Assembly: GCF_006345805.1 (NCBI RefSeq)
Contig: NC_043021.1
Coordinates: forward strand, 9,362,001-9,426,000
DNA: 64,000 nucleotides
DNA from: Octopus sinensis
Taxonomy: Eukaryota
Direction of reading: 5' to 3'
In this document: positions 1-62,766 of the stretch, in pieces
How positions within the stretch are numbered: position 1 is the stretch's first letter
How the letters are laid out: the number at the start of each line of letters is the position of its first letter
Program-made: the position numbers and the translations under genes
Notes under the pieces: generated by a model
Told to the model about the DNA's origin: nothing
The model's input: the letters and a program-made list of their open reading frames with translations, nothing else
The model's database searches: none

Positions 1-511
1 ATCATTTGCTTCCACGGAATTACCCGAAGTGAAGTGCTTTGATTTTGTCGAGTTATATCGAAAGAATGCCATAAAATAACTAACTACCAGTTGAGCACTG
101 GGGATCGATTATTCGACTTTCCCCGTCTTCCGAAATTGCTGGCCATGTGCTATAAACTCTTACATTTTTACTACTATATTTACAACCAACGAGAGAGAGA
201 CAGTTTATACGTTTTCTCGTGTAGGAGTAAACTGTACGAAAATACTATGAGATTGATACGTGAAACAACCAAAACATCAAAGACTAATAAAAATGTTATT
301 TCAAGAATAACTTCAACTTTTTTGCGTCGAAATCTTTTGTTGTTCGAAAATGTGTGAAGGTGTTTTTAATTAATGTTAAATCGCTTTCGCTTTGCATCGA
401 AGGTCAAGGCCGTTTTGCAAACGTGCGTGTTCAGCCACATTACTTATATGTGTGTGTGTATCTGTTGCTCTCACTCTCTCTTTATATACATACATACATA
501 TATATATAATA

Positions 512-553
<42 letters not shown>

Positions 554-590
554 GAATGGAGCTGAACGACGAATTAACAAATTTACTTTA

Positions 591-671
591 TTTTCTACAT
601 GTTTCGAAGGCTGCGTATTCCTAATTGCGAAGGAATAAGGAGTACATTATGCCGCTTTCTCATCAGGAAAA
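591..671 (-). ncRNA. Minimal type-I hammerhead ribozyme motif, apparently intact
   Basis: Minus strand: UUUUC CUGAUGA GAA..(hairpin UAUUCCU/AGGAAUA)..UUC GAAAC AU GUA^GAAAA. Stem I 5 bp; stem II closed by G-C; palindromic stem III ACAUGU. Confidence 0.75.
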
Positions 672-759
672 GCAAGGAACTTATGTCAACATCAAAATGC
701 ACAAAAAACTTTTAGATGATTGCTCACACGGAGCCCATAGCGATATATAAATATATATA

Positions 760-1026
760 GGTACTATTTAAGAAGAGTGGACCCGGTGCGCGCACTCGCG
801 CTAGCTAGTCGTGACTAGTCGATCCTACGGACTACCTAGCAAAGTAAATAAAACACGAAATAGTTTTTTTTTACACAAACTAAACAATTTTTCTTAAACA
901 AAGTAAATAATCTTTTAAAACAAAATAAATAAAACACAAAAACACGAAGAAAGGATCGAATAGTCACGTCTAGCTAGCGCGGATGCGCGACTACGCGCAC
1001 CGGGACCACTTTTGTTAAATAGTACC
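760..1026. mobile_element. Foldback MITE with ~70-bp terminal inverted repeats (Mutator/Merlin-like?)
   Basis: GGTACTATTTAA...CGATCCT (760-827) versus AGGATCG...TTAAATAGTACC (952-1026). ATATATATA on both flanks. Confidence 0.65.
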
Positions 1027-1029
1027 ATA

Positions 1030-1112
1030 TATATATATATATAACACACACATATATATAAATATATAGTAAAGCAAATAAAAAGGGCTAGCAGCAGGCT
1101 ATACATACACAC

Positions 1113-1145
<33 letters not shown>

Positions 1146-1328
1146 TATATCTATCACACACATATATATATATATACACACACACACACATATATATATA
1201 CACACACACATATATATATACACACACCACACATATATATATACACACACACACACCACCATATATATACACACACACACCACATATATATACACACACA
1301 CACACACATATATATACACCACACACAC

Positions 1329-1363
<35 letters not shown>

Positions 1364-1430
1364 TATATATACACACACACACATATATATATATACACAC
1401 ACACACATATATATATATACACACACACAC

Positions 1431-1461
<31 letters not shown>

Positions 1462-1476
1462 TATATATATACATAT

Positions 1477-1523
<47 letters not shown>

Positions 1524-1548
1524 TATATACACACATACACACACACAC
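1030..1548. repeat. Compound (TA)n(CA)n microsatellite
   Basis: Directly visible. Confidence 0.95.
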
Positions 1549-1566: not shown

Positions 1567-1795
1567 CTTCTATGTCATCTTCGTCTAACGCTTCGCCTTC
1601 TGCCTGGTCTTCCTCGTCGCTGTCCAACGAATGCTTCTCCTTAAACCTCCGGCTACTCGCCTCCTTCGACGCCACCACGCCGTCGTCGCATTCCTGTGCC
1701 GTCTCCAGGCACATCCTCTTCGGCGCTCCGGCGAGGATCTCTCCATCACCGTCCACCAGTTTCCTCCTCATCGTTTTGTGCGCGCTCGAAGCCAT
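1567..1795 (-). CDS. CD2BP2: CD2 antigen cytoplasmic tail-binding protein 2 (U5 snRNP 52K / Lin1) homologue, first coding exon; gene continues left out of the window
   Basis: Translation MASSAHK...SRRFKEKHSLDSDEEDQAEGEALDEDDIEG resembles the recalled human CD2BP2 N-terminus (SRFKGKHSLDSDEEE...EDVEG). Donor G|GTAAGA at 1567/1566, phase 1. The rest of the track ORF 1154-1795 is read-through into (CA/TA)n. An ATG at 1771 is an alternative start. No exon 2 seen in 1-1566. Confidence 0.85.
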
Positions 1796-1994: not shown

Positions 1995-2620
1995 CCTTTT
2001 CTTTTTCTTCTTCTATTTCTTCTTCTCTTCTTCTTATTCTCCTCTCTCTTCTATTTCTTCTTCTTCTTCTTCTTCTTCTTCTATTCTTCTTCTTCTTCTT
2101 CTATTCTTCTTCTTCGTCTTTTCTATCTTCTCTCTTCGTCTCTTCTTCTTCTGTCTCTTTCTTCTGTCTCTTTCTTGTTCTTCTATTTCTTCTCCTTTTC
2201 TTTCCTCTTCTTATTTTCTTTTCTTCTTCTCTCTTCTCTTTTTTCTCTTCTATATTTCTTTCTCTCTTCCTTCTCTCTCTTCTTCTTCTTTCCTTCCGTC
2301 TTTCTTCTTCTTCTTCTCTATCTTCTTCTTCTTTCTTCTTCTTCTATTTCTTCCCCTCCTCCTCTTTCTTATCTTTCTTCCTTCTTCCATTTCTTCTCTC
2401 CTCCTTTTCTTTTCTCTTCTTCTTTCTTCCTCTTCTTCTTCTTCATTCTTCTTTTTTCTTCTTCATTCTTCTTCTTCCTTCTCCTTCTTCTTCTTCTTCT
2501 TTTCTTTTCTTCTTCTCTCTTCTTCTTCTCTTCTTCTTCTTCTCTTCTTCTTCTTCTTCTCTTCTTCTTCTTTCTTCTTCTTCTTCTCTTCTTCTTCTTC
2601 TTCTTCTTCTTCTTCTTCTA
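1995..2620 (+). repeat. Imperfect (TTC)n polypyrimidine tract, ~620 bp
   Basis: Directly visible. Confidence 0.95.
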
Positions 2621-4261: not shown

Positions 4262-4620
4262 TTTATTATTATTATTATTATTCAGTAGTTTTATTTTTAT
4301 AGTGTGCTTTCACTTCACTACCGAGCGCAGCTCTGTGTGCCTTGGGTATGTGCTGTGATTTGTTGTGATGCTCTGATGGTTATTGTATGGAAAGTGTTCT
4401 GCGTAGGATGTGTGCAGTGCCTAGTAGTGCAATTTTCTGTGTGTTATATGTGTTTGTAAGTCCTGGTGTTTTTGTTATGTATTTGTCTGAATATTTTTTT
4501 ATCATGCCTAATGCACCTACTATGATAGGAATTGTTTCTGTTTTTAGATTCCACATTCTGGTTACCTCTATTTCCAGGTCTTTGTATTTTGAAAGTTTCT
4601 CCATTTCTTTTAGAGACACG
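4262..4620 (-). mobile_element. R4/Dong-like (RLE) non-LTR retrotransposon 3' fragment
   Basis: EKLSKYKDLEIEVTRMWNLKTETIPIIVGALG...QKIALLGTAHILRRTL is the typical RLE C-terminus; 3' UTR plus (AAT)n tail. Confidence 0.8.
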
Positions 4621-4626
4621 TTGTCA

Positions 4627-4674
<48 letters not shown>

Positions 4675-10439: not shown

Positions 10440-10795
10440 TATCCGCTCAGTCGAAGTCGACTCTCGGTCACTCGTTGGATCAGTGTCCTCCAGTCAGTTC
10501 TATCCTGGGCGCTTCTTTCAGACTGGCTATGTCCATTCCGGTATCACTCTTGATGGTGTCAAACCAGCGAGTTCTTGGTCGGCCTCTTCCTCTCTTGCCA
10601 CTGACCATTCCAAGCATGATGTCCTTCTCCAGGGATTTTCTCCTCATAATATGACCGAAATATGACAATCTATGCTTGGTGATCCTAGCTTCTAGTGACA
10701 TTTTCAGCCTGATCTGCTTAAGAACTTCTCCATTGGTGAGCCTCGCTGTCCATGGAATCTGTAAAAATCTTCAAAGCCCAACCGTTCTCCTCACC
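10440..10795 (-). mobile_element. RTE-clade LINE 3' fragment
   Basis: LQIPWTARLTNGEVLKQI...RLSYFGHIMRRKSLEKDIMLGMVSGKRGRGRPRTRWFDTI. Confidence 0.85.
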
Positions 10796-17140: not shown

Positions 17141-50182
<33,042 letters not shown>

Positions 50183-52840: not shown

Positions 52841-55800
52841 CTGGAAATAGAGAAGAAAATAAAGACTTAAAATTCTGTGTGTATGCGTGTGTGTGTGTGT
52901 TGATTTTCATCTACAAGACGAAAGCACTAAATTCTATAGCAGAGTGTAATAGTGAATATATAAAGTTGTCTGTGTGTGTGTGTGAAGAAGCTTGAGAGGC
53001 TGTTGGATGGAACCTACACTCGCCTCCTTATGAGAGCTCAAAATCTCTCGTGGAAGCGCTATACAACCAAAATGCAAATATATGGGAAACTACCACCTGT
53101 GTCATCTCTTGTGAAAGGTAGGAGAGTCCAGTTTGCTGGACATTGTTGTAGAGCTGAAAAAGAGGTAATTTCTACTCGTCTCCTCTGGAAGCCATCTACT
53201 CGCAATACCAGAGGGCGCACACTCTCCTACCCTGATGTAATCTCCAGGGATACAGGCATCCAGCAACAGGACCTCCGTAATGCCATGATGGACCGTGAAG
53301 TCTGGCGTAGCATGGTAAATTCCATTGTCTTGACCACGGTCGAACAATGATGATGATGATGTGTGTGTGTGTGTATGTATGTGCCTGTGGAGTGGCTGTG
53401 TGGTAAGTAGCTTGTTTACCAACCACATGGTTCCGGGTTCAGTCCCACTGCATGGCACCTTGGGCAAGTGTCTTCTACTATAGCCTCGGGCCGACCAAAG
53501 CCTTGTGAGTGGATTTGGTAGACGGAAACTGAAAGAAGCCCGTCGTATATATGTATGCGTGTGTGTGTTTGTCCCCCTAGCATTGCTTGACAACTGATGC
53601 TGGTGTGTTTATGTCCCCGTTACTTAGCGGTTCGGCAAAAGAGACCGATAGAATAAGTACTGGGCTTACAAAAGAATAAGTCCCGGGGTCGAGTTGCTTG
53701 ATTAAAGGCGGTGCTCCAGCATGGCCGCAGTCAAATGACTGAAACAAGTAAAAGAGTAAAGATAGATATAAGGATACACAAAACTTACTGAAGTATCAAC
53801 ATTATCAAGGTTCAAGTTCTCTAAATCCAATTCCAATTCTTTCTCCAGGTCTGACACAGCTTGTTTTGACAATATTGAGTCTACAGATTTTTCTGTTGAT
53901 GCTGTTTCACTTTCAGTATGTTGGGCGATGTTGTCTTTATCATGGAGCTCCTATATATATCAGCCACAGAGATGAAGAAAAACAGACATTTAAAAAAACA
54001 CATTATAGAAAGAACATTTCACCAACGTTATGTTTACACAATCTAACTCCTTTCTGTATGATGCAAACTCCTAGCACACAAGTCACTAGCTCAACAACAA
54101 GACACGACTCATAGACCTACTACATTAGATATGTCACCAAACTGATGACTATACCGTACACTCAGATAGTATGTATTGCAGGTTGTTGCAATCTGCAATC
54201 TGGTGGGTCATAGGGAAGGATTGAATATATCACTGCCACACACCAGATCCTACCTGAAGATGTTCCTGACTAAAAACCGACCAAGATACAATAACACCAT
54301 ATGCACATTGCCCAACTGTTCAATCAACAATGAGAACATATGTTTGCATTCCTATGTGATGTTTAAAATCAGATGTAGGAACTGTAATGGATCTTGCGTT
54401 CTTGACAACATGCAGTGTTTAATGTTAGGGGTGTAGTGTTACAATGTGACGTACTGTACTCTCTCTACAGTCCAGTCTATACATTCTAATTGTAGCTATA
54501 GGAGAGGTAGGCAAAAGTGGGTCAGAACATGAGAATTGCTGGGGATTCTACAAATTTTTAATGCATTTTGCATTAAATGTTAGCACTAACTCACAACATA
54601 GGTGTTTATCTATCTATATAGGTGCAGGCATGGCTGGTGTAGTAAGAAGCTTGCTTCCCAATCACATGGTTCCAGGTTCAGTCCCACTGCATAGCACCTT
54701 GAGCAAGTGTCTTCTAGTACAGCCTCAAGCCGACCAAAGGCTTGTGAGTGGATTTGATGGTAGGAAAATGAAAGAAGCCCAATATATGTGTGTGTGTGTG
54801 TGTGTGTCCGTCTATTTCCTCCAGAACTGCTTGACAACTGGTGTTAACATCCTTGTAACTTAGCAGTTCGGCAAAATGAACTGATAAAATTAGTATCAGG
54901 CTTTACAAGAGAAAAAAAAATGTACTGGGAACGATGCATTCAACTAAAACTTCTTCAAGGAAATGCCCCAGCATGACCACAGTCTAATGACTGAAACGAG
55001 TAAAAGTCAAAAGATCTCACTACATAACTACTTCTAATTAAGCTATTTAAAACTCCATGCATTATGTTAACGGTAACAAAATCATTAACTTGATGCTCAA
55101 AATCCACACAAAAACACAGACACCTTCAGTGTCCATAAAATATTAGTCAGAAGTGAAGGCTTCAAATAAGAAATCTGTGCAAAAAGTTAAGACAAATGAA
55201 CAGTAGCATTTCAAGAGGATGGGGAGGTGGGGTGTTAAATATCCCTTATACCAGTGGTTCTCAACCATTTTTTTTTTACCTGTGGACCCCTTTGATCACT
55301 GTTTTACTTTTGGTGGACCCACAGAGGCTCTCAATGTTTAAAAACTAGTTCTATAGATATATCATCATTGTTTAACGTCCGTTTTCCATGCTAGCATGGG
55401 TTGGATGGTTCGACCGGGGTCTGGGAAGCCAGGAGGCTGCACCAGGCTCCAGTCTGATCTGGCAGAGTTTCTACTACTGGATTCCCTTCCTAATGTCAAC
55501 CACTCCGAGAGTGTAGTGGGTGCTTTTACATGCCACCGGCACAGGGACCAGTCAGGCGGTATTGGCAGTGACCATGCTCGAATGTTTTTACATGTGCCAG
55601 TAAGGTGACGCTGGTAACGATCACACTCAAATGGTGCCTTTTATGTGCCACTGGCATGGAAACCGGTTAGCCGCTCTGTCAACGATCACACTCGTATGGT
55701 ACTCATTGTACCTCGCTAGCACGGATGCCAGTCATTGAATTTGATTTTGAGTTCACTTGCCTCAACAGGTCTTCGCAAGCAGAGTTTAGTGCCCAAAGAA

Positions 55801-58800
55801 GGAAAAGGTACACATAAGTGGGCTGTTTACGCATATATATATATATATACCGTTGGCAATTTTTTTCCCTCTGTCTTCCCTTCTCCTATGTTTCCGACGA
55901 AGAGCTCCGCTCGAAACGTTAGACCCTCCTCCTTTCCTGAGTGTCCAATAATACTATATTTGTTCCACGTCCTCGCGTTGTTGTGTTTTTTTGTGCTCTC
56001 ATGTTTGGATTAACTATATATATATCTACACATGCACACACACATATGCACAAATGACTATCTATGTTTCTATCTATCTATATGTATATGTGTGTGTGTG
56101 TGTGTGCCTGCACATGCACACATATGTACACACACACAGATACACATACATGTATGCGTATGCATTAAGTAAGAAAAGAAAGAAAGAGAGAAAGCAACAG
56201 TGACCGTCACCAACCACCATTTCTGGACATTGAACTGAAAGCCGTTGCTATGGTTTTTAAATGCAGATGGTGTAACAAGAAGATGAAGAGGATAAAGCAG
56301 GCAGTGATAGAAGGGTTAGTGCAATGAAGTTAGGGTACGGCTGCTGTTTAGTAGTGGCTTCACACGTGTATGAGGTGGGGGTTAAGACGGCAGGGATGCT
56401 TATTGTGTTCGCATAGAGGAAGGAGATGGTGGTGAGGAGAGGTAGGAATAGAAAACGGTGCCACTTAATGACTCCACATGCACGCACAAACACACACACA
56501 CACACTGGGATGGTCATGTGAGAGGGTTGTGTTGGGTATAGTTGAGTAAATATCCTACTTCGACATGTGGCAAAGGGAATAAGATAAACATGTAGAGTTT
56601 AGTGAGAGTGCTACCAGACCATGTAATCATCAACATCATTGATGCTTAGCTGTTTAACCCTAGGTCAATATACATCACCACCATCATCATCATCGCTTCG
56701 CAATCTGTTTACATGCTCGTAGGGTTAAGATGGTTCCACTGGAGATGGTCAGCTGGAGAGCTGCACCAGGCTCTGGTCTGTTTTGGCTTGGTTTCTATGA
56801 CTGGATGCCCTTCCTAATGCCAACCACTCCACAGCATGCTGAGTGTTTTGTATGTGTTACTGGCACAGGTACCTTTCACATGGCCCCAGCAGTGAATATC
56901 CCATAAACAGTGCATCTAGGAGTACACTATCTAATGTAACCTTCACATTTGTTTTTAAAGACAATAGAAAAATGTGGCTATTGTTTCTAGCAGTTTGAGC
57001 AACTAAACAGGGATACCCTTGAGTTTCTGTTTCAGTGAGTGAATCCGGATAGATGTCTGCTGAAGCAAGACTGAGCAGTGACTAGTTCAGAATGACCACA
57101 GCAAGGGATCTAGACCTACTGAAGTAGAATTAATCAAAGATTAGTTCATGAATGACCACAGCTATAAACCTAGGCCCATTGAAACAGTACTGGCCAGAGA
57201 TTAACTCATAATGACCACTGCTTGAGATTTAATCAAAAATAATGTTCTGTCCAAATTGATGTCTAAGGCTATCATATAATAAGATTAGATGACCAAGGTT
57301 CTGGGAGCATAACTGGTTGGACAGCAACAATAATGTGGTAGACTTGAACTGTTGCCCAGTTTAATATTAACACCTGGTCATTGTGGGAGTCAGTACCATC
57401 TTTAAGCATGGGTACACTGGGCAGTCGCCCAGGGACCTCATGGGTTTATGGACCCAATTATGATCTATGTATGCTGTGGCTGGCTGTCAATGAATAAATA
57501 CAATAGAGTCAAGTGCAATGATTTGCCTCGGGGCTTATAATACTGTTAAGATAGCCCTGGTGGTGGGGTCATAAGTGGTGGCCACCATACTGCAATTATT
57601 TGGATCCAGTCTTCAGCCTGAGAATAACTCCTGACTTAATGGGTTCTGTTTCCCTTTCCTCATCATCAATAGTAGGGGCCCTACACAAAACAGTGGGATC
57701 GGCATGTCCTTTCTCTGACTAAACTATAAACAATGGGGAGAAGGGAGATGAGGAAATTGATCAATAGTCCACTCAGAACATATGGTCATGTTGGACATTT
57801 CCATCATGAAACAGAGAGAGTGTGAGAAGTGGGGGTGGGGTAGGGGTGGATGGAATTCTGCACACCACATAACGCCCTCATAAGATTTTTATTGTTTGGA
57901 ATTTTCAGAAAATTTTTGCTAATTTGTATTCTCCACATAGGAATTCCCATGACTTCGAAAAATAAACCTTTAAAAAAAATTTTATGGAAAATAAAAAAAT
58001 TTTTTTTTTTTTTTGAAATCACTGTTTAAAATACAGACAGTCCGAACTTTTTGCTTAAATATCTGCTACAGACCGTTGAATGTTTTTAAGGGGAGAAAGA
58101 TACTGAAAAACATCACTCTGTCAGCCTGACAAACAAATGAGAAAAGTATAAGGTGGTAGTTGGATGTGCTAAAAATAACAGCTAAATAGCCCTTAAGTCA
58201 AACACCAAACTTTTTTTTTTTTGATTTCGCATAATTGTATGAATTCCTGTGTGTTGAACACAAGTTTGCAAAAATTTTCTGAAAATTCCCAAAAAATAGA
58301 AAAGTTATGAGGGTTTATATATGGCATGCTTCAAGCAGAATTCTACCTGTGGGGGGGTGAAACCTGTTGTTAAGACCAAACTGTGAGGTTAGCAAAATAG
58401 CAAGCACCACTGGGGAAAATAAACAAGTAGTTTGACCATGATGGCCATTATGAACATACCAATGGGTCAGCAGGAGGTTTAGATGGAGGTGGGGATGGGG
58501 TAGGAGACAGACTGCGAGCAGTAGCATGGGGTGCACCAACAGCAGGCTCTGGTGGGTCGGAGAGGTCAGACCCCCAGTCTTCTTCTTCTTCTCCTCCTCC
58601 TCCTCCTCCTCCTTTTTGTCATCATCTTTCACAATTGCGGCATGGGACGGAGTGACAGCAACGGGGGGAGGCAAAGCGGCGGTGGAGGGTGGCGGGGAGG
58701 GTGAGGGTGAGGGAGACGCCGGAGTAGGAAGAGCGGCAGGAGTAGCAGTGGGAGTAGCAGCAGGAAGAGTTGGCACTGTTTCAGCTGCTGCTGCTTCCTT

Positions 58801-61800
58801 TTCTACTTGTTGTTGTGGTGGTGGTGGTTGTGGTTGTAGTGGTTGCAGTAGTGGTTGTTGGTGGTCATCCTGTCCAAAATGACGGTTGGCGTCGTCGTCG
58901 GACGTGCCGGTGTCACATACCACCTCTGCTTCGTTGTACGTAGAGTCCTCTGTCGGATCACTGCTCTTGTCACCATCGCTTGGTTTGTACACAAACTTCC
59001 CTTCCGCTTCAGCTTTCAACATTTCTTCCACAGGGTTCCTTTCAGAGTTCAACTAAAGACAGGGAAAGAGAAAAAAATTATTAGATGAAGGAAAGCAACT
59101 CAGATGAATTCATTTCAAAACATAACAAAATGTCACCCACACTTTTCTTTAACCCTTTCGTTACTGTCGAATGTAAATAATGAAAATAATGTAAATTAAT
59201 GTAGTCCTTGATGGGCAATCTTCAAAAACGACAGAGTAGTCAAGGTTGGAGTGTCTTTATTAATAAGTTTGTTTAATCAGGGTGGTCGTGGGACTAAACA
59301 AAACATAAATATACTTACTGGTCGGCTGCCGTAGGCTGTGGCTGGCAAAGATATAGAATACTGGGGTTGGAGATATTGCTCAGTTTTGAAAGTGTCCTTC
59401 AAACCAGGGAAAAGGTTCTCGTAATCGGTTGGGTCTGCCAAAGAATCAGCAGCACGTTTGTTGATCTTAGACAAAGCTTCCCGCCACAGTTTTACAACTC
59501 TATAAGCAGGAAGAAACAACACAGAGACATGTATCGGGGGGAAAAAATTGAAACGAAGCAAAAACAGAAGAGGAAAAGAGAAATGAAAAACGAATACGAG
59601 GTGATGAAACCAATGATAGATGTTTACATGTACTTGTTTAACCCTAGGTCAACCTAGATTCAGTAAACCTATGATTCAAACATGCTTGCTATGATAATCC
59701 TATACACTGCATATCTCAGTCTTCTGTCATCTCCTTCGTATGGTTCAGTGTTTTGAAATCAGCCTTTGATACTAAATGGCTGAATATTCGACACACAAAT
59801 CATCATCTTCGTTTAACGTCCACTTTCCATGCTGGCATGGGTTGGACGGTTTGACTGAGGACTGGTGAGCCAGAGGCTGCACCAGGCTCAATCTGATCTG
59901 GCAAAGTTTCTACAGCTGGATGCCCTTCCTAATGCCGACCACTCCGAGAATGTAATTCTTAATGTAAGTCTCAGCTGGAATCAGTCTGACAAAGCAGGGT
60001 ATTTGAATTACAGAAATGATCCTGGTCTGGTCATACCACCCTTGGCAGGAACAACCCCCTCAGGCATTGGCACCCATCAAGATGAAAAGGCTCAATCGTT
60101 TGCCAAAGATTAACTACTCGGATATGAACTAATGCTGACAAAGAGACTTTGAATTCAAATATGCCTAGATTCCTAGCGAACAAACAGAGAATTTCACTGT
60201 CTTTAATTGCAGCTGATGTTTGACAAGCAGAGAAGACATGTGGCGTATAGTGGAGGCACATGGCCTATTGGTTAGAGCAGCGGACTCGCGGTTGAGTGAT
60301 CGTGGGTTCGAATCTCAGACCAGGCGATGTGTGTGTTTATGAGCGAAACACCTAAGCTCCACGCGGCTCTAGCAGAAGGTAATGTCGAACTTCTGCTAAC
60401 TCTTTCACCACAGCTTTCTCTCACTCTTTCCTCTTGCATCTAGCAGCTCACCTGCGATGGACCGGCGTCCCGTCCAGGTGGGGAACCTATATACCAAGGA
60501 AACTGGGAAACTGGCCCTATGAGCTAGGCATGGCTCGAGAAGGATGGAACAAAAAAAAAAAAAGCAGAGGAGAGGAAAAGTAAAACAAGAGGTTTTCAAA
60601 ACACTGAAAATGGAAAGCATGTGAAACAATCAAGACAACATATGAGACTTACCGTGATATCTGGCTTGGTAGATATGTCCTGGCAAAGAAGGCAGCTTCA
60701 GGCAGACGGTTGGTGTTGATGAGGACTTCTAAACATTCATCAAGTCTGTGGAATTGAGAATGATAGAATGGTAAGTGATAGTAGGAGGAACAGAATAAGG
60801 AAGAAATAAAACTGTGAATGACAGCACCCAGAGGAATAGAATGTGCAAAGATAGAACTCTGATAGAATGTGTAATGGTAGAACTGTAAATGATAAAATGG
60901 TGAGGAATAGAATGGAGGGGAGGATAATAGAATGAGGACAATGAAGTGGTAAGGATAAAATGGTAATATACATGTTGAGTAGACAACAGAGGATCATCAT
61001 CATCGTTTAATGTCTGCTTTCCATGCTGGCATGGGTTGGATGATTTGACTGAGGACTGGCGAACCAGATGGCTGCACTGGGCTCCAATCTGATCTGGCAG
61101 AGTTTCTACAGCTGGATGCTCTCCCTAACGCCAACCATTCTGAGAGTGTAGTGGGTGCTTTTACGTGTTACGGGCACGTATTTTATACAAATTTTTTTTA
61201 CAAATATTTTATACAAATATTTTACAGATATTTTATACAAAACAGACAAAAATAAAACAAAATACACAAATATTTCAGGAAATAGTATCAGTATTTATAG
61301 CGGTGGGTGTTTATACCTATCTAATAGGCACAAACCCAGCAGATCTGTGATTAAAGGCATTCCAGCTGGTACCCTCACAACTTTTATCATTCAGATTCAG
61401 TGAACCTTAAACTGCTTTATTAGTGTCTTTGTTTTACTAAGACAACAGGATGTGATCAGGGGAAAGGCTTAGCTGCCTTTTCTGGTAGATCATGCAACTT
61501 TATAGAGCAGTCACGGGAAGGGCTGGCGCTAGGAAGTGTGGGCCCTCTGCTCTACTAAAGCTGAAGATTGATGCTTTATGCGGTATGCCAGTCTCCAGCC
61601 ATAAAGCGTTGAGGGTTTAAGGCTCCACCATTAGCCACAATGATATACTAAAAATTTATCAGAGCAACCTCTTATTTCTTTACTGCCCACATGGGGCTAC
61701 ACACAGAGGGGGCAAACAAGGACAGACAAATGGATTAAGTTGATTATATCAACCCCAGTGTGTAACTGGTACTTAATTTATCGACCCCAAAAGGATGAAA

Positions 61801-62265
61801 GGCAAAGTCGACCTCAGCGGAATTTGAACTCAGAACATAATGGCAGACAAAATACCGCTAAGCATTTTGCCCGGCGTGCTAACGTTTCTGCCAGCTTGCC
61901 GCAGTCAATTATATCAACCCCAGTATTCAACTGGTACATATTTTATCGACCCCTAAAAAGATGAAAGGCAAAGTTGATCTTGGTGGAATTTGAAGGATAC
62001 AGCAAGACATTAGCAATAAAAGTATAGAGGAAATAAAAACAAACACTCACTTTCCAAGAGCAAAGTAAGAGAGGAATGCAACATTATTCTGTGAGGCTTT
62101 CTCTGCTGTTTGACCAAGACGAAGGACCATGTCTGTGTTACCAGCAGATGTAGCCAGTAGGAGAAGGCCACCAAAGTCCTGTGCTTGGTGGAGACACTCT
62201 TGAGCCAGGCCAAACTCACACTTGTTGATAGCCAGCTCAGCAAGAAGTTTCCATTTCTGCTCAGA
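52805..62265 (-). CDS. COPB2: Coatomer subunit beta' (beta'-COP), last six coding exons; 5' part lies beyond the window
   Basis: Exons 62051-62265, 60653-60745, 59319-59499, 58460-59052, 53789-53950, 52805-52840, all GT-AG. SEQKWKLLAELA...QDFGGLLLLA...NNVAFLSYF, RLPEAAFFARTYLPSQ, AADSLADPTDYENLFPGLK and ELDLENLNLDNVDTSDVNLDDDLLED* match recalled COPB2. One apparent 1-bp frameshift near 58591. Confidence 0.93.
52985..53360 (+). mobile_element. Same RTE-like LINE family, 3' fragment
   Basis: Near-identical to 19318-19690 in the opposite orientation. Confidence 0.85.
53388..53760 (+). mobile_element. Family A SINE, full length
   Basis: Close to family consensus; inserted directly after an RTE tail. 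Confidence 0.85.
53789..53950 (-). CDS. COPB2: COPB2 penultimate exon
   Basis: ELHDKDNIAQ...DLEKELELDLENLNLDNVDTS|GTAAGT; 162 nt. Confidence 0.9.
54622..55010 (+). mobile_element. Family A SINE, diverged
   Basis: Same architecture. Confidence 0.75.
55890..55924 (+). ncRNA. Hammerhead motif with core substitution (CCGACGA)
   Basis: GUUU CCGACGA A GAGC UCC GCUC GAAAC GUU^AGAC. Palindromic AACGUU; U4 of the core replaced by C. Confidence 0.55.
57040..57235. repeat. Diverged 60-bp tandem repeat (about 3 units)
   Basis: GAATGACCACAGC at 57090 and 57150, AATGACCACTGC at 57210; the intervening sequences align loosely. Confidence 0.7.
57596..57718 (-). CDS. COPB2: Candidate alternative terminal exon of COPB2 (40 aa)
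   Basis: Strong pyrimidine tract, then TTTAG| and the phase-0 ORF SEKGHADPTVLCRAPTIDDEERETEPIKSGVILRLKTGSK*. No homology support. Confidence 0.35.
   Translation of the reverse strand, partial: SEKGHADPTVLCRAPTIDDEERETEPIKSGVILRLKTGSK
58460..59052 (-). CDS. COPB2: COPB2 large low-complexity exon (Pro/Ala/acidic), with apparent 1-bp deletion
   Basis: TCTTTAG|LNSERNPVEEM... to ...KPPADPL|GTATGT. The exon is 593 nt, but flanking phases 0/0 require a multiple of 3 (594). Confidence 0.8.
59319..59499 (-). CDS. COPB2: COPB2 exon
   Basis: VVKLWREALSKINKRAADSLADPTDYENLFPGLKDTF...GSRP|GTAAGT. Confidence 0.95.
60653..60745 (-). CDS. COPB2: COPB2 exon
   Basis: LDECLEVLINTNRLPEAAFFARTYLPSQIS|GTAAGT. 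Confidence 0.95.
62051..62265 (-). CDS. COPB2: COPB2 exon
   Basis: TTTCAG|SEQKWKLLAELAINKCEFGLAQECLHQAQDFGGLLLLATSAG...FALG|GTGAGT. Confidence 0.95.
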
Positions 62266-62766
62266 CTGAAAACATAAAAAAGAAGATTTTATATATATCA
62301 TCATCATCATCATCATCATCATTTAGCGTCCGTTTTCCATGCTAGCATGGGTTGGACGGTTCAACTGGGGTCTGTGAAGCCGGAAGGCTTCATCAGGCCC
62401 AGTCAGATCTGGCAGTGTTTCTACGGCTGGATGCCCTTCCTAACGCCAACCACTCCGTGAGTGTAGTGGGTGCTTTTTATGTGCCACCCGCACAGGTGCC
62501 AGACAGAGCTGGCAAACGGCCACGAACGGATGGTGCTTTTACGTGCCACCGGCACATATAGTGTGAACAAGCTATCTTTGAGATAGCATGTTATTACATT
62601 GGTTTGATATCATTGTATCATACGTTCCTATAGTTTATATGCATAAGTATACATATGACACATATATAGGAAGAATGCTGGCAAGACATGCAACATGAAT
62701 GAAGCTTGAACATCAAAAATGGAAAACGTAAAAATGAAACGCAATTATTTTAAAAGAACATGCATT

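What the first reader, a model, noticed from the sequence alone, without database searches (positions are those of the whole stretch)
591..671. Apparently intact hammerhead in sense orientation inside CD2BP2 intron 1
Seen, minus strand: UUUUC-CUGAUGA-GAA[...UAUUCCU/AGGAAUA hairpin...]UUC-GAAAC-AU-GUA^GAAAA. All core nucleotides are present; predicted cut between 596 and 595. CD2BP2 is transcribed on the same strand and its exon-1 donor is at 1566, so the motif should be in the pre-mRNA of a spliceosomal gene. Inference: the 2-nt loop III probably needs dimerisation, which would keep a monomer in pre-mRNA largely silent or make cleavage conditional. If active, it could affect intron 1 processing.
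Basis: partly seen in the sequence, partly recalled or inferred. Interest (0 to 1): 0.8.

Follow-up and report, generated by a model that had tools for sequence, protein, structure and literature searches.

The report
Transposon-type dimeric hammerhead in CD2BP2 intron
The hammerhead ribozyme motif is really there, in the sense strand of the first intron of a CD2BP2-like gene, but it is the well-known short-stem-III "dimer-only" type carried by Penelope-like retroelements and retrozymes, a lone copy that is most likely a silent transposon relic and not a regulator of the gene.

Summary
On the minus strand, 671->591 carries every hammerhead core nucleotide. Helix I has 5 bp, helix II is long and interrupted, and helix III is only the 6-nt palindrome ACAUGU. 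The predicted cut lies between 596 and 595. The motif sits 895 nt downstream of the exon-1 donor (GT at 1566/1565) of a CD2BP2-like gene on the same strand.

It is not a chance match. A descriptor built from published criteria hit 1 of 2000 shuffled windows but twice in the real one. The window holds two more type-I hammerheads (42074->42009 and 20475->20412), also on the minus strand. They lie in homologous repeat copies about 70% identical, with identical cores and six compensatory base-pair changes.

All three match the minimal, palindromic-helix-III hammerheads of Penelope-like elements and metazoan retrozymes. In vitro, single copies of that type do not cleave and dimers cleave weakly. 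The finding's copy lies in a ~190-nt island between (TA)n tracts, the insertion target reported for some PLE clades. It has no tandem partner in the window, and the predicted folds bury its core.

Best reading: a solo retroelement-derived hammerhead, essentially silent in the pre-mRNA. It is a new member of a known kind and of low interest. Copy number in the genome and conservation in other species could not be tested.

The parts
591..671 (-). HHR1, the hammerhead of the finding (type I, helix I open). Helix I is 671-667/595-591. The CUGAUGA box is 666-660. Helix II is 659-606, with G659-C606 as the 10.1-11.1 pair and an inner hairpin 637-631/622-616. GAA is 605-603. The palindromic helix III segment ACAUGU is 602-597. 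H17 is A596, and the predicted cut is 596|595.
   Evidence: Read directly. Found by the descriptor scans. Shuffle expectation 0.0005-0.027 per window.
551..742 (-). The ~190-nt unique island that carries HHR1: 71 nt upstream of the motif and a ~40-nt tail after it. It is bounded on both sides by TA-rich tracts. It is interpreted as a 5'-truncated or solo retroelement end.
   Evidence: Sequence. No other copy in the window by blastn. The flanking TA tracts appear.
440..550 (.). (TA)n / (TG)n-type microsatellite immediately 3' of the island in the transcript sense.
760..1026 (.). 267-bp foldback, MITE-like element with ~67-nt inverted arms (760-826 / 952-1026, 88-89% complementary). TA repeats lie on both sides. 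It is taken to be an independent insertion and not part of the hammerhead element.
1100..1547 (.). Compound (TA)n(TG)n microsatellite that fills the first ~450 nt of intron 1.
   Evidence: TRF; sequence.
1567..1795 (-). Coding part of CD2BP2-like exon 1 (ATG at 1795, last exon base 1567). The donor GT is at 1566/1565.
42009..42074 (-). HHR2, a second type-I hammerhead: CUACG-CUGAUGA-GCUUG...CAAGU-GAA-ACCAUUGGU-A^UGUAG. Its 10.1-11.1 pair is G-U. Helix III is one base short of a palindrome.
41857..42430 (-). The repeat element that carries HHR2. It has 103-nt inverted arms (41857-41959 / 42328-42430, 91%) and ends in a (TA)n tract.
20412..20475 (-). HHR3, a third type-I hammerhead: CCAUG-CUGAUGA-U-GGCUG...CAGCC-GAA-ACUAAUUAGU-A^CAUGG. 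It has an extra U between A9 and 10.1. Helix III is a perfect 10-nt palindrome.
20166..20483 (-). A copy of the element-2 family, about 70% identical. After the hammerhead and its tail comes the start of a further unit (20224-20166), a partial head-to-tail tandem. It ends in a (TA)n tract.

Best explanation
HHR1 is a solo copy of the minimal, dimer-dependent type-I hammerhead carried by Penelope-like retroelements (in their pseudo-LTRs) and by their non-autonomous derivatives, the metazoan non-LTR retrozymes. A short 3'-terminal fragment of such an element (~190 nt, 742->551) inserted into a (TA)n microsatellite in intron 1 of the CD2BP2-like gene. It happens to lie in the sense orientation.

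In the parent element, two hammerheads in adjacent tandem units pair their palindromic 15.x/16.x segments into one extended helix III, a double hammerhead. This lets multimeric element transcripts be cut to unit length. Here only one copy is present, so helix III cannot form: as a monomer it would be 2 bp closing a 2-nt loop.

The 6-bp ACAUGU self-duplex is worth only about -4.6 kcal/mol, which by my conversion is a Kd near millimolar. Two separate pre-mRNAs are therefore unlikely to dimerise. Predicted alternative pairings also bury the CUGAUGA box.

The motif is therefore expected to be catalytically silent, or nearly so, in the CD2BP2 pre-mRNA and neutral for the gene.

Shown: the motif, its strand and position, its non-random nature, and the hammerhead-bearing repeat family in the same window with covariation. 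Inferred: the PLE/retrozyme origin of HHR1 itself, the lack of activity, and neutrality.
For: 1. The anatomy matches the published definition of metazoan PLE and canonical type-I hammerheads. Helix I is short (5 bp) and helix II long. G10.1-C11.1 is present. Helix III is very short, and 15.2-16.2 plus the loop form a palindrome (criteria in PMC4209133 and PMC6765202).

2. The window holds two further hammerheads of the same class. They sit in homologous repeat copies that are 70% identical over 257 nt. Their cores are identical. Across 14 compared pairs there are six changes on both sides: two in helix I, two in helix II and two in helix III. Two further pairs change G-U to G-C, and no pair is broken. 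[quoted passage not shown]

3. That family shows a partial head-to-tail tandem and an inverted copy of its 3' tail, and it ends in (TA)n. PMC8557442 describes complex tandem and inverted insertions and a microsatellite target bias for PLEs. The HHR1 island likewise lies between TA tracts.

4. Chance expectation is 0.0005-0.027 per window, against 2-3 observed.

5. No second hammerhead lies downstream of exon 1 in the window, and the three helix III palindromes differ.

6. The hammerhead fold is not the predicted minimum. It scores -9.0 against -11.3 kcal/mol for the 81-mer. Forcing the core open costs 1.6 to 6.2 kcal/mol as flanks are added. The z-score against shuffles is 0.14. UUCCUGAU/AUUAGGAA and GCUUUU/GAAAGC compete with the active fold. 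The ACAUGU duplex is worth -4.6 kcal/mol.

7. In vitro, a single PLE min-HHR gave no detectable cleavage and dimers only weak cleavage (PMC4209133). Axolotl retrozyme hammerheads cleave efficiently only as dimers (PMC7229834).
Against: No other copy of the HHR1 island exists in the window, so HHR1 itself has no covariation or copy-number support. Its flanks show no similarity to elements 2 and 3.

No reverse transcriptase or GIY-YIG frame was found within 2.9 kb upstream of HHR2 or HHR3, and none can lie upstream of HHR1. The link to PLEs therefore rests on architecture alone.

[quoted passage not shown] Rfam models do not recognise any of the three.

The (TA)n preference was reported for Naiad PLEs, a clade that lacks canonical hammerheads (PMC8557442). 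It is therefore only a loose argument.

The rest of the genome and the rest of intron 1 could not be searched, so a partner copy further down the intron cannot be excluded.

Secondary-structure energies ignore the tertiary structure of the hammerhead core.
Confidence: 0.7

Rival explanations
1. Conditionally active intronic ribozyme. The motif cleaves CD2BP2 pre-mRNA when a partner is available. The partner could be a second copy further down intron 1 beyond the window, or abundant trans RNAs of the same family, such as retrozyme circular or multimeric RNAs carrying the ACAUGU palindrome. Cleavage would lower or modulate CD2BP2 expression.
For: The core is fully intact and in the sense orientation, and the palindromic helix III allows a double hammerhead. 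Retrozyme RNAs can be highly expressed in molluscs (PMC7229834). Conserved intronic type-I hammerheads, thought to be domesticated from retroelements, exist in amniotes (PMC6155905).
Against: No partner lies within the visible part of the transcript. The nearest hammerheads are upstream of the promoter and have different palindromes. The 6-bp duplex is weak at -4.6 kcal/mol. Competing folds bury the core. Even dimers of PLE min-HHRs cleave poorly in vitro (PMC4209133). No conservation data are available. The amniote intronic hammerheads have the conserved loop contacts of the canonical type (PMC6155905); from my own knowledge, not checked here, they also have a stable helix III, which HHR1 lacks.
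Confidence: 0.12
2. Chance match. The motif is a fortuitous arrangement of CUGAUGA, GAAA and short complementary runs in AT-rich intron sequence, with no ribozyme ancestry.
For: Helix I is four A-U pairs plus one C-G. Helix II has two mismatches. HHR1 has no homologue in the window. There is no Rfam hit. The fold is not more stable than shuffles (z = 0.14). At 0.0005-0.027 expected per 64 kb, a genome of a few Gb would hold tens to about a thousand chance matches.
Against: The full published feature set is met, including G10.1-C11.1 and a palindromic helix III, and that set occurred in 1 of 2000 shuffles. The same window holds two demonstrably evolved hammerheads of the same class, so genuine copies far outnumber chance ones in this genome. 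The island has the look of an insertion into a microsatellite.
Confidence: 0.1
3. Part of a larger composite element together with the adjacent 267-bp foldback (760-1026). This could be a viroid-like, highly base-paired retrozyme unit whose RNA is cut and circularised.
For: The foldback lies only ~90 nt upstream of the hammerhead on the same strand. Retrozyme circular RNAs fold into stable, highly paired structures (PMC7229834).
Against: TA-repeat tracts separate the foldback from the island on both of its sides, as expected for an independent insertion. There is only one hammerhead, so no unit can be excised. No tandem repeat was reported in this region at a score of 200 or more.
Confidence: 0.06

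Closest known systems
Minimal / small type-I hammerheads of Penelope-like elements (Cervera & de la Pena 2014, PMC4209133; Lunse, Weinberg & Breaker, cited in PMC6765202)
   Same: Type-I topology; short helix I (4-5 bp); long helix II; G10.1-C11.1; extremely short palindromic helix III that only makes sense as a dimer. They occur mostly as single scattered copies taken to be truncated elements. PMC8557442 describes complex tandem and inverted arrangements and a microsatellite target bias for PLEs. Standard models tend to miss them.
   Different: No pseudo-LTR or RT-EN reading frame accompanies any of the three copies here. [quoted passage not shown] Its helix II carries an unusually long 36-nt inner insert. 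Cephalopod examples were not found described in the searched literature.
Metazoan non-LTR retrozymes and classical satellite hammerheads (newt satellite 2, Schistosoma Sm-alpha, mussel, coral and axolotl retrozymes; PMC7229834)
   Same: Type-I hammerhead with 1-2 bp helix III and a palindromic loop; AT-rich non-coding repeat; dimer-dependent cleavage in the amphibian examples; now argued to be non-autonomous derivatives of PLE pseudo-LTRs (bioRxiv 10.64898/2026.07.22.740005).
   Different: Retrozymes are defined by tandem units of about 170-400 bp, each with a hammerhead. HHR1 is a single copy. The canonical loop 1 - loop 2 tertiary contacts are not recognisable.
Conserved intronic hammerheads of amniotes (RECK, CTCL and DTNB introns; PMC6155905)
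   Same: Type-I hammerhead, sense orientation inside an intron of a protein-coding gene, believed to derive from retroelement hammerheads.
   Different: The amniote motifs are conserved across birds and mammals and keep the loop-loop contacts (PMC6155905). From my own knowledge, not checked here, they also have a stable helix III and cleave as monomers. HHR1 has none of the structural features, and its conservation is unknown.
Double-hammerhead of avocado sunblotch viroid and newt RNA (Forster et al. 1988, cited in PMC4209133 and PMC6765202)
   Same: Two copies pair their helix III strands to form the active structure, and single copies stay silent.
   Different: Those RNAs are made as multimers by rolling-circle or tandem transcription, which supplies the partner in cis. 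A lone intronic copy has no such source.

Membership tests
Hammerhead ribozyme (structural class) | Conserved core: C3 U4 G5 A6 N7 G8 A9, G12 A13 A14, A15.1-U16.1, and H17 (not G) at the cleavage site | tested here: met
   All positions read directly at 666-660, 605-603, 602/597 and 596.
Hammerhead ribozyme (structural class) | Three helices radiating from the core | tested here: inconclusive
   Helix I has 5 bp. Helix II has 9 positions with 2 mismatches, plus a 7-bp inner hairpin. Helix III has only 2 bp closing a 2-nt loop, which cannot form in a monomer, but gives 6 bp as a self-duplex. The hammerhead fold is not the predicted minimum-energy structure.
Hammerhead ribozyme (structural class) | Match to the curated Rfam hammerhead covariance models | tested here: not met
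   No hammerhead family at gathering score or at E<=10 on short slices around HHR1, HHR2 and HHR3. The literature says PLE-type variants are atypical minimal motifs that needed a relaxed descriptor (PMC4209133).
Hammerhead ribozyme (structural class) | Site-specific self-cleavage giving 2',3'-cyclic phosphate and 5'-OH ends | not testable with these tools
   Needs in vitro transcription or end-specific RNA sequencing.
PLE-type / dimeric minimal type-I hammerhead | Type-I topology with a very short, palindromic helix III (15.2-16.2 and loop) | tested here: met
   Helix I is the open helix. ACAUGU (602-597) is a perfect palindrome. HHR3 has ACUAAUUAGU, also a perfect palindrome.
PLE-type / dimeric minimal type-I hammerhead | Conserved G10.1-C11.1, short helix I and enlarged helix II | tested here: met
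   G659-C606; helix I of 5 bp; helix II spans 54 nt.
PLE-type / dimeric minimal type-I hammerhead | Unpaired nucleotide between A9 and 10.1 | tested here: not met
   Absent in HHR1, present as a U in HHR3, ambiguous in HHR2. The paper lists it as a recurrent feature that emerged in the hits, not a requirement.
PLE-type / dimeric minimal type-I hammerhead | Belongs to a multi-copy consensus family with covariation in the helices | tested here: inconclusive
   Met for HHR2 and HHR3: six two-sided changes in 14 pairs and none broken. HHR1 has no second copy in the window, and the genome could not be searched.
Penelope-like element (the retrotransposon itself) | Pseudo-LTRs flanking an ORF with a telomerase-like RT and a GIY-YIG endonuclease | tested here: not met
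   No Pfam family in the three sense frames of the 2.9 kb upstream of HHR2 and HHR3. Upstream of HHR1 lie a foldback element, microsatellite and the CD2BP2-like exon 1. At most these are truncated or non-autonomous derivatives.
Penelope-like element (the retrotransposon itself) | Partial tandem and inverted arrangements, and insertion into microsatellites | tested here: met
   Element 2 has an inverted copy of its tail. Element 3 has the start of a further unit after the tail. All three end in (TA)n, as PMC8557442 describes. This is suggestive but not specific.
Metazoan non-LTR retrozyme | Tandem repeat units of about 170-400 bp, each with a type-I hammerhead (at least two consecutive) | tested here: not met
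   Single copy. No tandem repeat was reported over 551-1045 at the score threshold used, and self-blast found no further copy.
Metazoan non-LTR retrozyme | Expression as linear and circular unit-length RNAs | not testable with these tools
   No transcriptome data are available.
Domesticated intronic hammerhead (amniote HH9/HH10 type) | Sense orientation within an intron of a host gene | tested here: met
   Same strand as exon 1 and 895 nt downstream of its donor. The acceptor lies outside the window.
Domesticated intronic hammerhead (amniote HH9/HH10 type) | Conservation at the orthologous position across species | not testable with these tools
   No cephalopod sequence was found in the collections. 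The exon-1 search gave only partial hits at 75-84% identity from other organisms. Their short contigs hold no hammerhead.
Domesticated intronic hammerhead (amniote HH9/HH10 type) | Stable helix III and loop-loop contacts that allow monomeric cleavage | tested here: not met
   Helix III is 2 bp with a 2-nt loop. No recognisable loop 1 / loop 2 pair is present.

The most novel reading that the evidence does not exclude
The solo hammerhead has been co-opted as a concentration-dependent switch. It would cleave CD2BP2 pre-mRNA only when a partner RNA with the same ACAUGU palindrome is abundant. The partner could be a second nascent transcript at a strongly transcribed locus, a copy deeper in intron 1, or expressed retrozyme RNA. 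This would couple the output of a U5 snRNP assembly factor to retroelement RNA load or to its own transcription rate.
Probability: 0.04. Interest if true: 0.75.

Novelty: new member of a known kind. Interest (0 to 1): 0.22.

Why it matters
If the main reading holds, the value is practical. This genome carries many dimer-type hammerheads that Rfam-based annotation misses completely: three in 64 kb and none reported. Ribozyme censuses of molluscan or cephalopod genomes that rely on Rfam alone will therefore undercount them. Repeat annotation could use these motifs to recognise PLE-derived non-autonomous elements.

For CD2BP2 itself it probably does not matter. It would matter only if the motif proved to be conserved at this site or cleaved in vivo. 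That would add an invertebrate example to the very small set of host-gene intronic hammerheads.

Tried and rejected
1. Rfam was run at gathering score on the whole window, and at E<=10 on slices around each of the three motifs. There was no hammerhead hit, only low-complexity microRNA-like noise over the TA repeats.

2. I looked for other copies of the HHR1 island in the window and for similarity to elements 2 and 3. None was found.

3. I scanned JGI metagenome contigs for a pattern specific to the HHR1 family. There were 0 hits.

4. I tried to reach cephalopod sequence through the protein collection. The exon-1 search returned only three short partial hits from other organisms, and their contigs carry no hammerhead. 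An exact look-up of nine small ORFs overlapping the three elements found none in the collection. I concluded that further protein-based searches for element copies would be futile, so I did not spend them.

5. I searched for RT or GIY-YIG frames upstream of HHR2 and HHR3 and among the large ORFs of the window. Nothing was found.

6. A MAFFT alignment of the three hammerheads was out of register in helix II, and for HHR1 also at the 3' end. I therefore tabulated the pairs by explicit parsing instead and built no covariance model. A model built from two sequences would have had little power to test HHR1.

7. I rejected the idea that the 760-1026 inverted repeat is the 'inverted 5'-truncated copy' typical of PLE insertions. 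Such a copy should contain the reverse-complemented hammerhead and tail, and it does not.

8. A U3/A8-variant hit at 37195-37317 (+) lies in low-complexity sequence with a 21-nt helix III region. I regard it as chance.

Full report
**1. The observation**

On the minus strand, 671->591 reads UUUUC CUGAUGA GAAAGCGGC-(36 nt)-GCAGCCUUC GAA ACAUGU A GAAAA. Every invariant hammerhead position is present:
- C3-A9 at 666-660.
- G10.1-C11.1 as G659-C606.
- G12 A13 A14 at 605-603.
- A15.1-U16.1 as A602-U597.
- H17 as A596.

Helix I is open-ended, so this is a type-I hammerhead. It has five pairs, four of them A-U. After a 2x2 internal loop three more pairs could form (U674-A588, U675-A587, C676-G586), read by eye.

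Helix II has nine stacked positions, two of them mismatched (A656/C609 and G653/A612). It is followed by the 7-bp UAUUCCU/AGGAAUA hairpin.

Helix III as a monomer would be A-U and C-G closing a 2-nt loop, which is sterically impossible. However, the six bases ACAUGU are a perfect palindrome.

**2. More than chance?**

I compared the window with dinucleotide-preserving shuffles of itself.
- A generic descriptor (core, helix I >=5, II >=3, III >=2 bp, G-U allowed) expects 0.027 hits per window. It found two.
- A stricter descriptor also requires G10.1-C11.1 and a Watson-Crick palindromic helix III. Cervera & de la Pena list these features as arguing against randomness (PMC4209133). It hit 1 of 2000 shuffles and found two in the real window.

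I fixed the second descriptor after seeing the hits, so its figure is indicative only.

Rfam gives no hammerhead match, neither at gathering score nor at E<=10 on a 501-nt slice. The predicted fold of the region is no more stable than its shuffles (z = 0.14).

**3. Gene context**

An ORF starts at ATG 1795 on the minus strand. It runs into AAG|GTAAGA, with GT at 1566/1565.

Its peptide contains RRFKEKHSLDSDEED. The best PDB match is human CD2BP2 residues 31-56 (E = 0.36).

A search of the large protein collection gave three short ORFs from other organisms. They share this block and lose similarity exactly after DDIEG, the donor position.

A profile of the four peptides hits only CD2BP2 in the PDB, aligned from the initiator Met (E = 2e-4).

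Exon 1 of a CD2BP2 orthologue is therefore well supported. The hammerhead lies 895 nt into the following intron, on the transcribed strand.

The three minus-strand frames of 1-600 were translated. I recognised no CD2BP2-like exon 2 among them by eye; nothing was searched. The intron therefore appears to leave the window, and its acceptor cannot be verified.

I could not verify the organism. No identical or near-identical protein was in the collection.

**4. What surrounds it**

The first kilobase of the intron is a compound (TA)n(TG)n microsatellite (1100-1547; more TA tracts at 1027-1071, 743-759 and about 440-550). Two unique islands interrupt it.
- The first is a 267-bp foldback at 760-1026. 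It has ~67-nt inverted arms (88-89% complementary) and TA repeats on both sides. I read it as an independent MITE-like insertion.
- The second is the ~190-nt island 742->551 that holds the hammerhead. It has 71 nt upstream of the motif and a ~40-nt tail after it.

Neither island has another copy in the window.

**5. The window holds a hammerhead-bearing repeat family**

The scan found a second motif at 42074->42009. A relaxed scan that allows one extra base after A9 found a third at 20475->20412. Both are on the minus strand. Both lie in the ~50 kb between the CD2BP2-like promoter and exons encoding a coatomer COPA/B TPR domain at 60.6-62.3 kb, where no gene was recognised.

The two lie in homologous elements that are 70% identical over 257 nt. 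Their hammerhead cores are identical and their helices differ by compensatory changes:
- Helix I is CUACG/UGUAG in HHR2 and CCAUG/CAUGG in HHR3. That is U-A to C-G, C-G to U-A, and G-U to G-C.
- Helix II is GCUUG/CAAGU in HHR2 and GGCUG/CAGCC in HHR3. That is G-U to G-C, C-G to G-C, and U-A to C-G.
- Helix III is ACCAUUGGU in HHR2 and ACUAAUUAGU in HHR3. The third pair changes C-G to U-A. That changes position 15.3 and its partner 16.3, which a self-duplex counts twice.

In total there are six two-sided changes in 14 pairs, and no pair is broken.

HHR3 has a U between A9 and 10.1 and a perfect 10-nt palindromic helix III. HHR2 has lost one base of that palindrome and has G-U at 10.1-11.1.

These are evolved hammerheads, yet Rfam sees neither of them.

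**6. Architecture of that family**

In the hammerhead's orientation the unit reads: internal region, hammerhead, ~50 nt, then a ~100-nt tail.
- Element 2 carries an inverted copy of the tail at its upstream end (arms 41857-41959 / 42328-42430, 91%).
- Element 3 carries the first ~60 nt of a new unit directly after the tail. This is a partial head-to-tail tandem.
- Both end in (TA)n.

Craig et al. describe complex tandem and inverted insertions for Penelope-like elements. They also describe a bias towards microsatellites, specifically (TA)n for the Naiad clade (PMC8557442).

No reverse transcriptase or GIY-YIG frame lies within 2.9 kb upstream of either copy. These are truncated or non-autonomous copies.

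**7. Comparison with what is known**

Cervera & de la Pena (PMC4209133) characterise two things.
- Most metazoan type-I hammerheads have a helix III of 1-2 bp capped by a 2-4-nt palindromic loop.
- The PLE 'min-HHRs' have a short helix I (4-5 bp), a large helix II, a conserved G10.1-C11.1, often an unpaired base after A9, and palindromic 15.2-16.2.

These motifs are massively abundant and mostly occur as single copies, 'probably related to truncated PLEs'. In vitro a single motif did not cleave detectably, and dimers and trimers cleaved weakly.

The review PMC6765202 says the same and cites Lunse et al. for cleavage as dimers.

Metazoan retrozymes, including those of a mussel, carry the same class of hammerhead in tandem units of about 300 bp, and the axolotl ones cleave efficiently only as dimers (PMC7229834). 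A 2026 preprint derives retrozymes from PLE pseudo-LTRs. It finds about 43% of Xenopus copies in introns, a statistical depletion but still a very common location (10.64898/2026.07.22.740005).

HHR1 fits this class in topology, helix proportions, G10.1-C11.1 and the palindrome. It lacks the extra base after A9 and has an unusually long helix II insert.

It does not meet the definition of a retrozyme, because it is not in tandem. It is not a PLE proper, because there is no ORF. It is not an amniote-type domesticated intronic hammerhead, because it lacks a stable helix III and loop contacts, and its conservation is unknown.

**8. How it most likely works, or does not**

In its parent element the palindrome lets two neighbouring copies build a shared helix III and cut multimeric transcripts to unit length. 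In the CD2BP2 pre-mRNA there is no neighbour in the visible sequence. The other two hammerheads are upstream of the promoter and have different palindromes.

- The ACAUGU self-duplex is predicted at -4.6 kcal/mol. By my conversion this is a dissociation constant near millimolar, far above any plausible pre-mRNA concentration.
- The hammerhead secondary structure (-9.0 kcal/mol) is less stable than the minimum-energy fold (-11.3) for the 81-mer.
- Keeping the core unpaired costs 1.6 to 6.2 kcal/mol as flanks of 0 to 100 nt are added.
- Competing pairings put CUGAUGA in a hairpin loop (GCUUUU/GAAAGC) or pair UUCCUGAU with AUUAGGAA of the helix II insert.
- UUCGAA, which spans 11.x-G12-A13-A14, is itself a palindrome, and the predicted dimer uses it.

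These energies ignore core tertiary structure, so they argue against activity without excluding it.

I conclude with about 0.7 confidence that HHR1 is a silent, neutral retroelement relic.

**9. Rivals**

I give it about 0.12. It needs a partner that I cannot see.
- A pure chance match, about 0.1. The density of genuine motifs in the same window and the full feature set speak against it.
- A composite unit with the neighbouring foldback, about 0.06. The TA tracts between them and the single hammerhead speak against it.

**10. Verdict**

The feature is an ordinary member of a known, very abundant class of retroelement hammerheads that happens to sit in an intron.

The points of modest interest are two. 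Such motifs appear to be dense in this genome and invisible to Rfam. And I found no paper describing them in cephalopods.

The decisive tests need the whole assembly, sister-species introns and RNA-end data, none of which were available here.

Noticed in passing
window 42009-42074 (-) and 20412-20475 (-); host elements 41857-42430 and 20166-20483: Two further type-I hammerheads sit in homologous repeat copies about 70% identical. Their cores are identical and helices I, II and III show compensatory changes. Element 2 has 103-nt inverted arms, and element 3 is a partial head-to-tail tandem. Rfam detects neither.
   Followed up: yes
window 760-1026: A 267-bp foldback, MITE-like element (GGTACTATTTAA...TTAAATAGTACC) with ~67-nt arms, inserted in a TA tract of the same intron just upstream of the hammerhead island. 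It has no other copy in the window.
   Followed up: partly
window 60652-60993 (-) and 62050-62322 (-), probably also 58318-59648 (-): Exons encoding a coatomer COPA/B TPR domain (Pfam PF23953, E = 6e-11 to 7e-25) lie on the minus strand. The 3' part of a coatomer alpha/beta'-type gene therefore lies upstream of the CD2BP2-like gene.
   Followed up: partly
window 1999-2619: A 621-bp (GAA/TTC)n microsatellite lies about 200 nt upstream of the CD2BP2-like start codon, directly next to the presumed promoter and 5'UTR.
   Followed up: no
window 26001-26466: A 221-bp unit is repeated 2.1 times at 99% identity. The unit holds a SINE-like sequence (GGCGTAGGAGTGGCTGTGTGGTAAG...) and a TA tract, which suggests a very recent duplication. 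Similar peptide fragments recur in many stop-free stretches across the window.
   Followed up: no
window 10483-10770 (-), 52964-53347 (+), 4383-4628 (-): By eye these stop-free stretches resemble the C-terminal tails of non-LTR (LINE) ORF2 proteins (...GRGRPRTRWFDTIKSDTG...). None gave a Pfam hit at E<=0.01.
   Followed up: partly
window 34220-34498 and 47780-47999: Minisatellites: a 29-bp unit x 9.6 copies (94% matches) and a 33-bp unit x 6.6 copies (87% matches).
   Followed up: no
window 37195-37317 (+): A hammerhead-like match of the U3/A8 core-variant type lies in T-rich low-complexity sequence with a 21-nt helix III region. It is probably a chance match.
   Followed up: no
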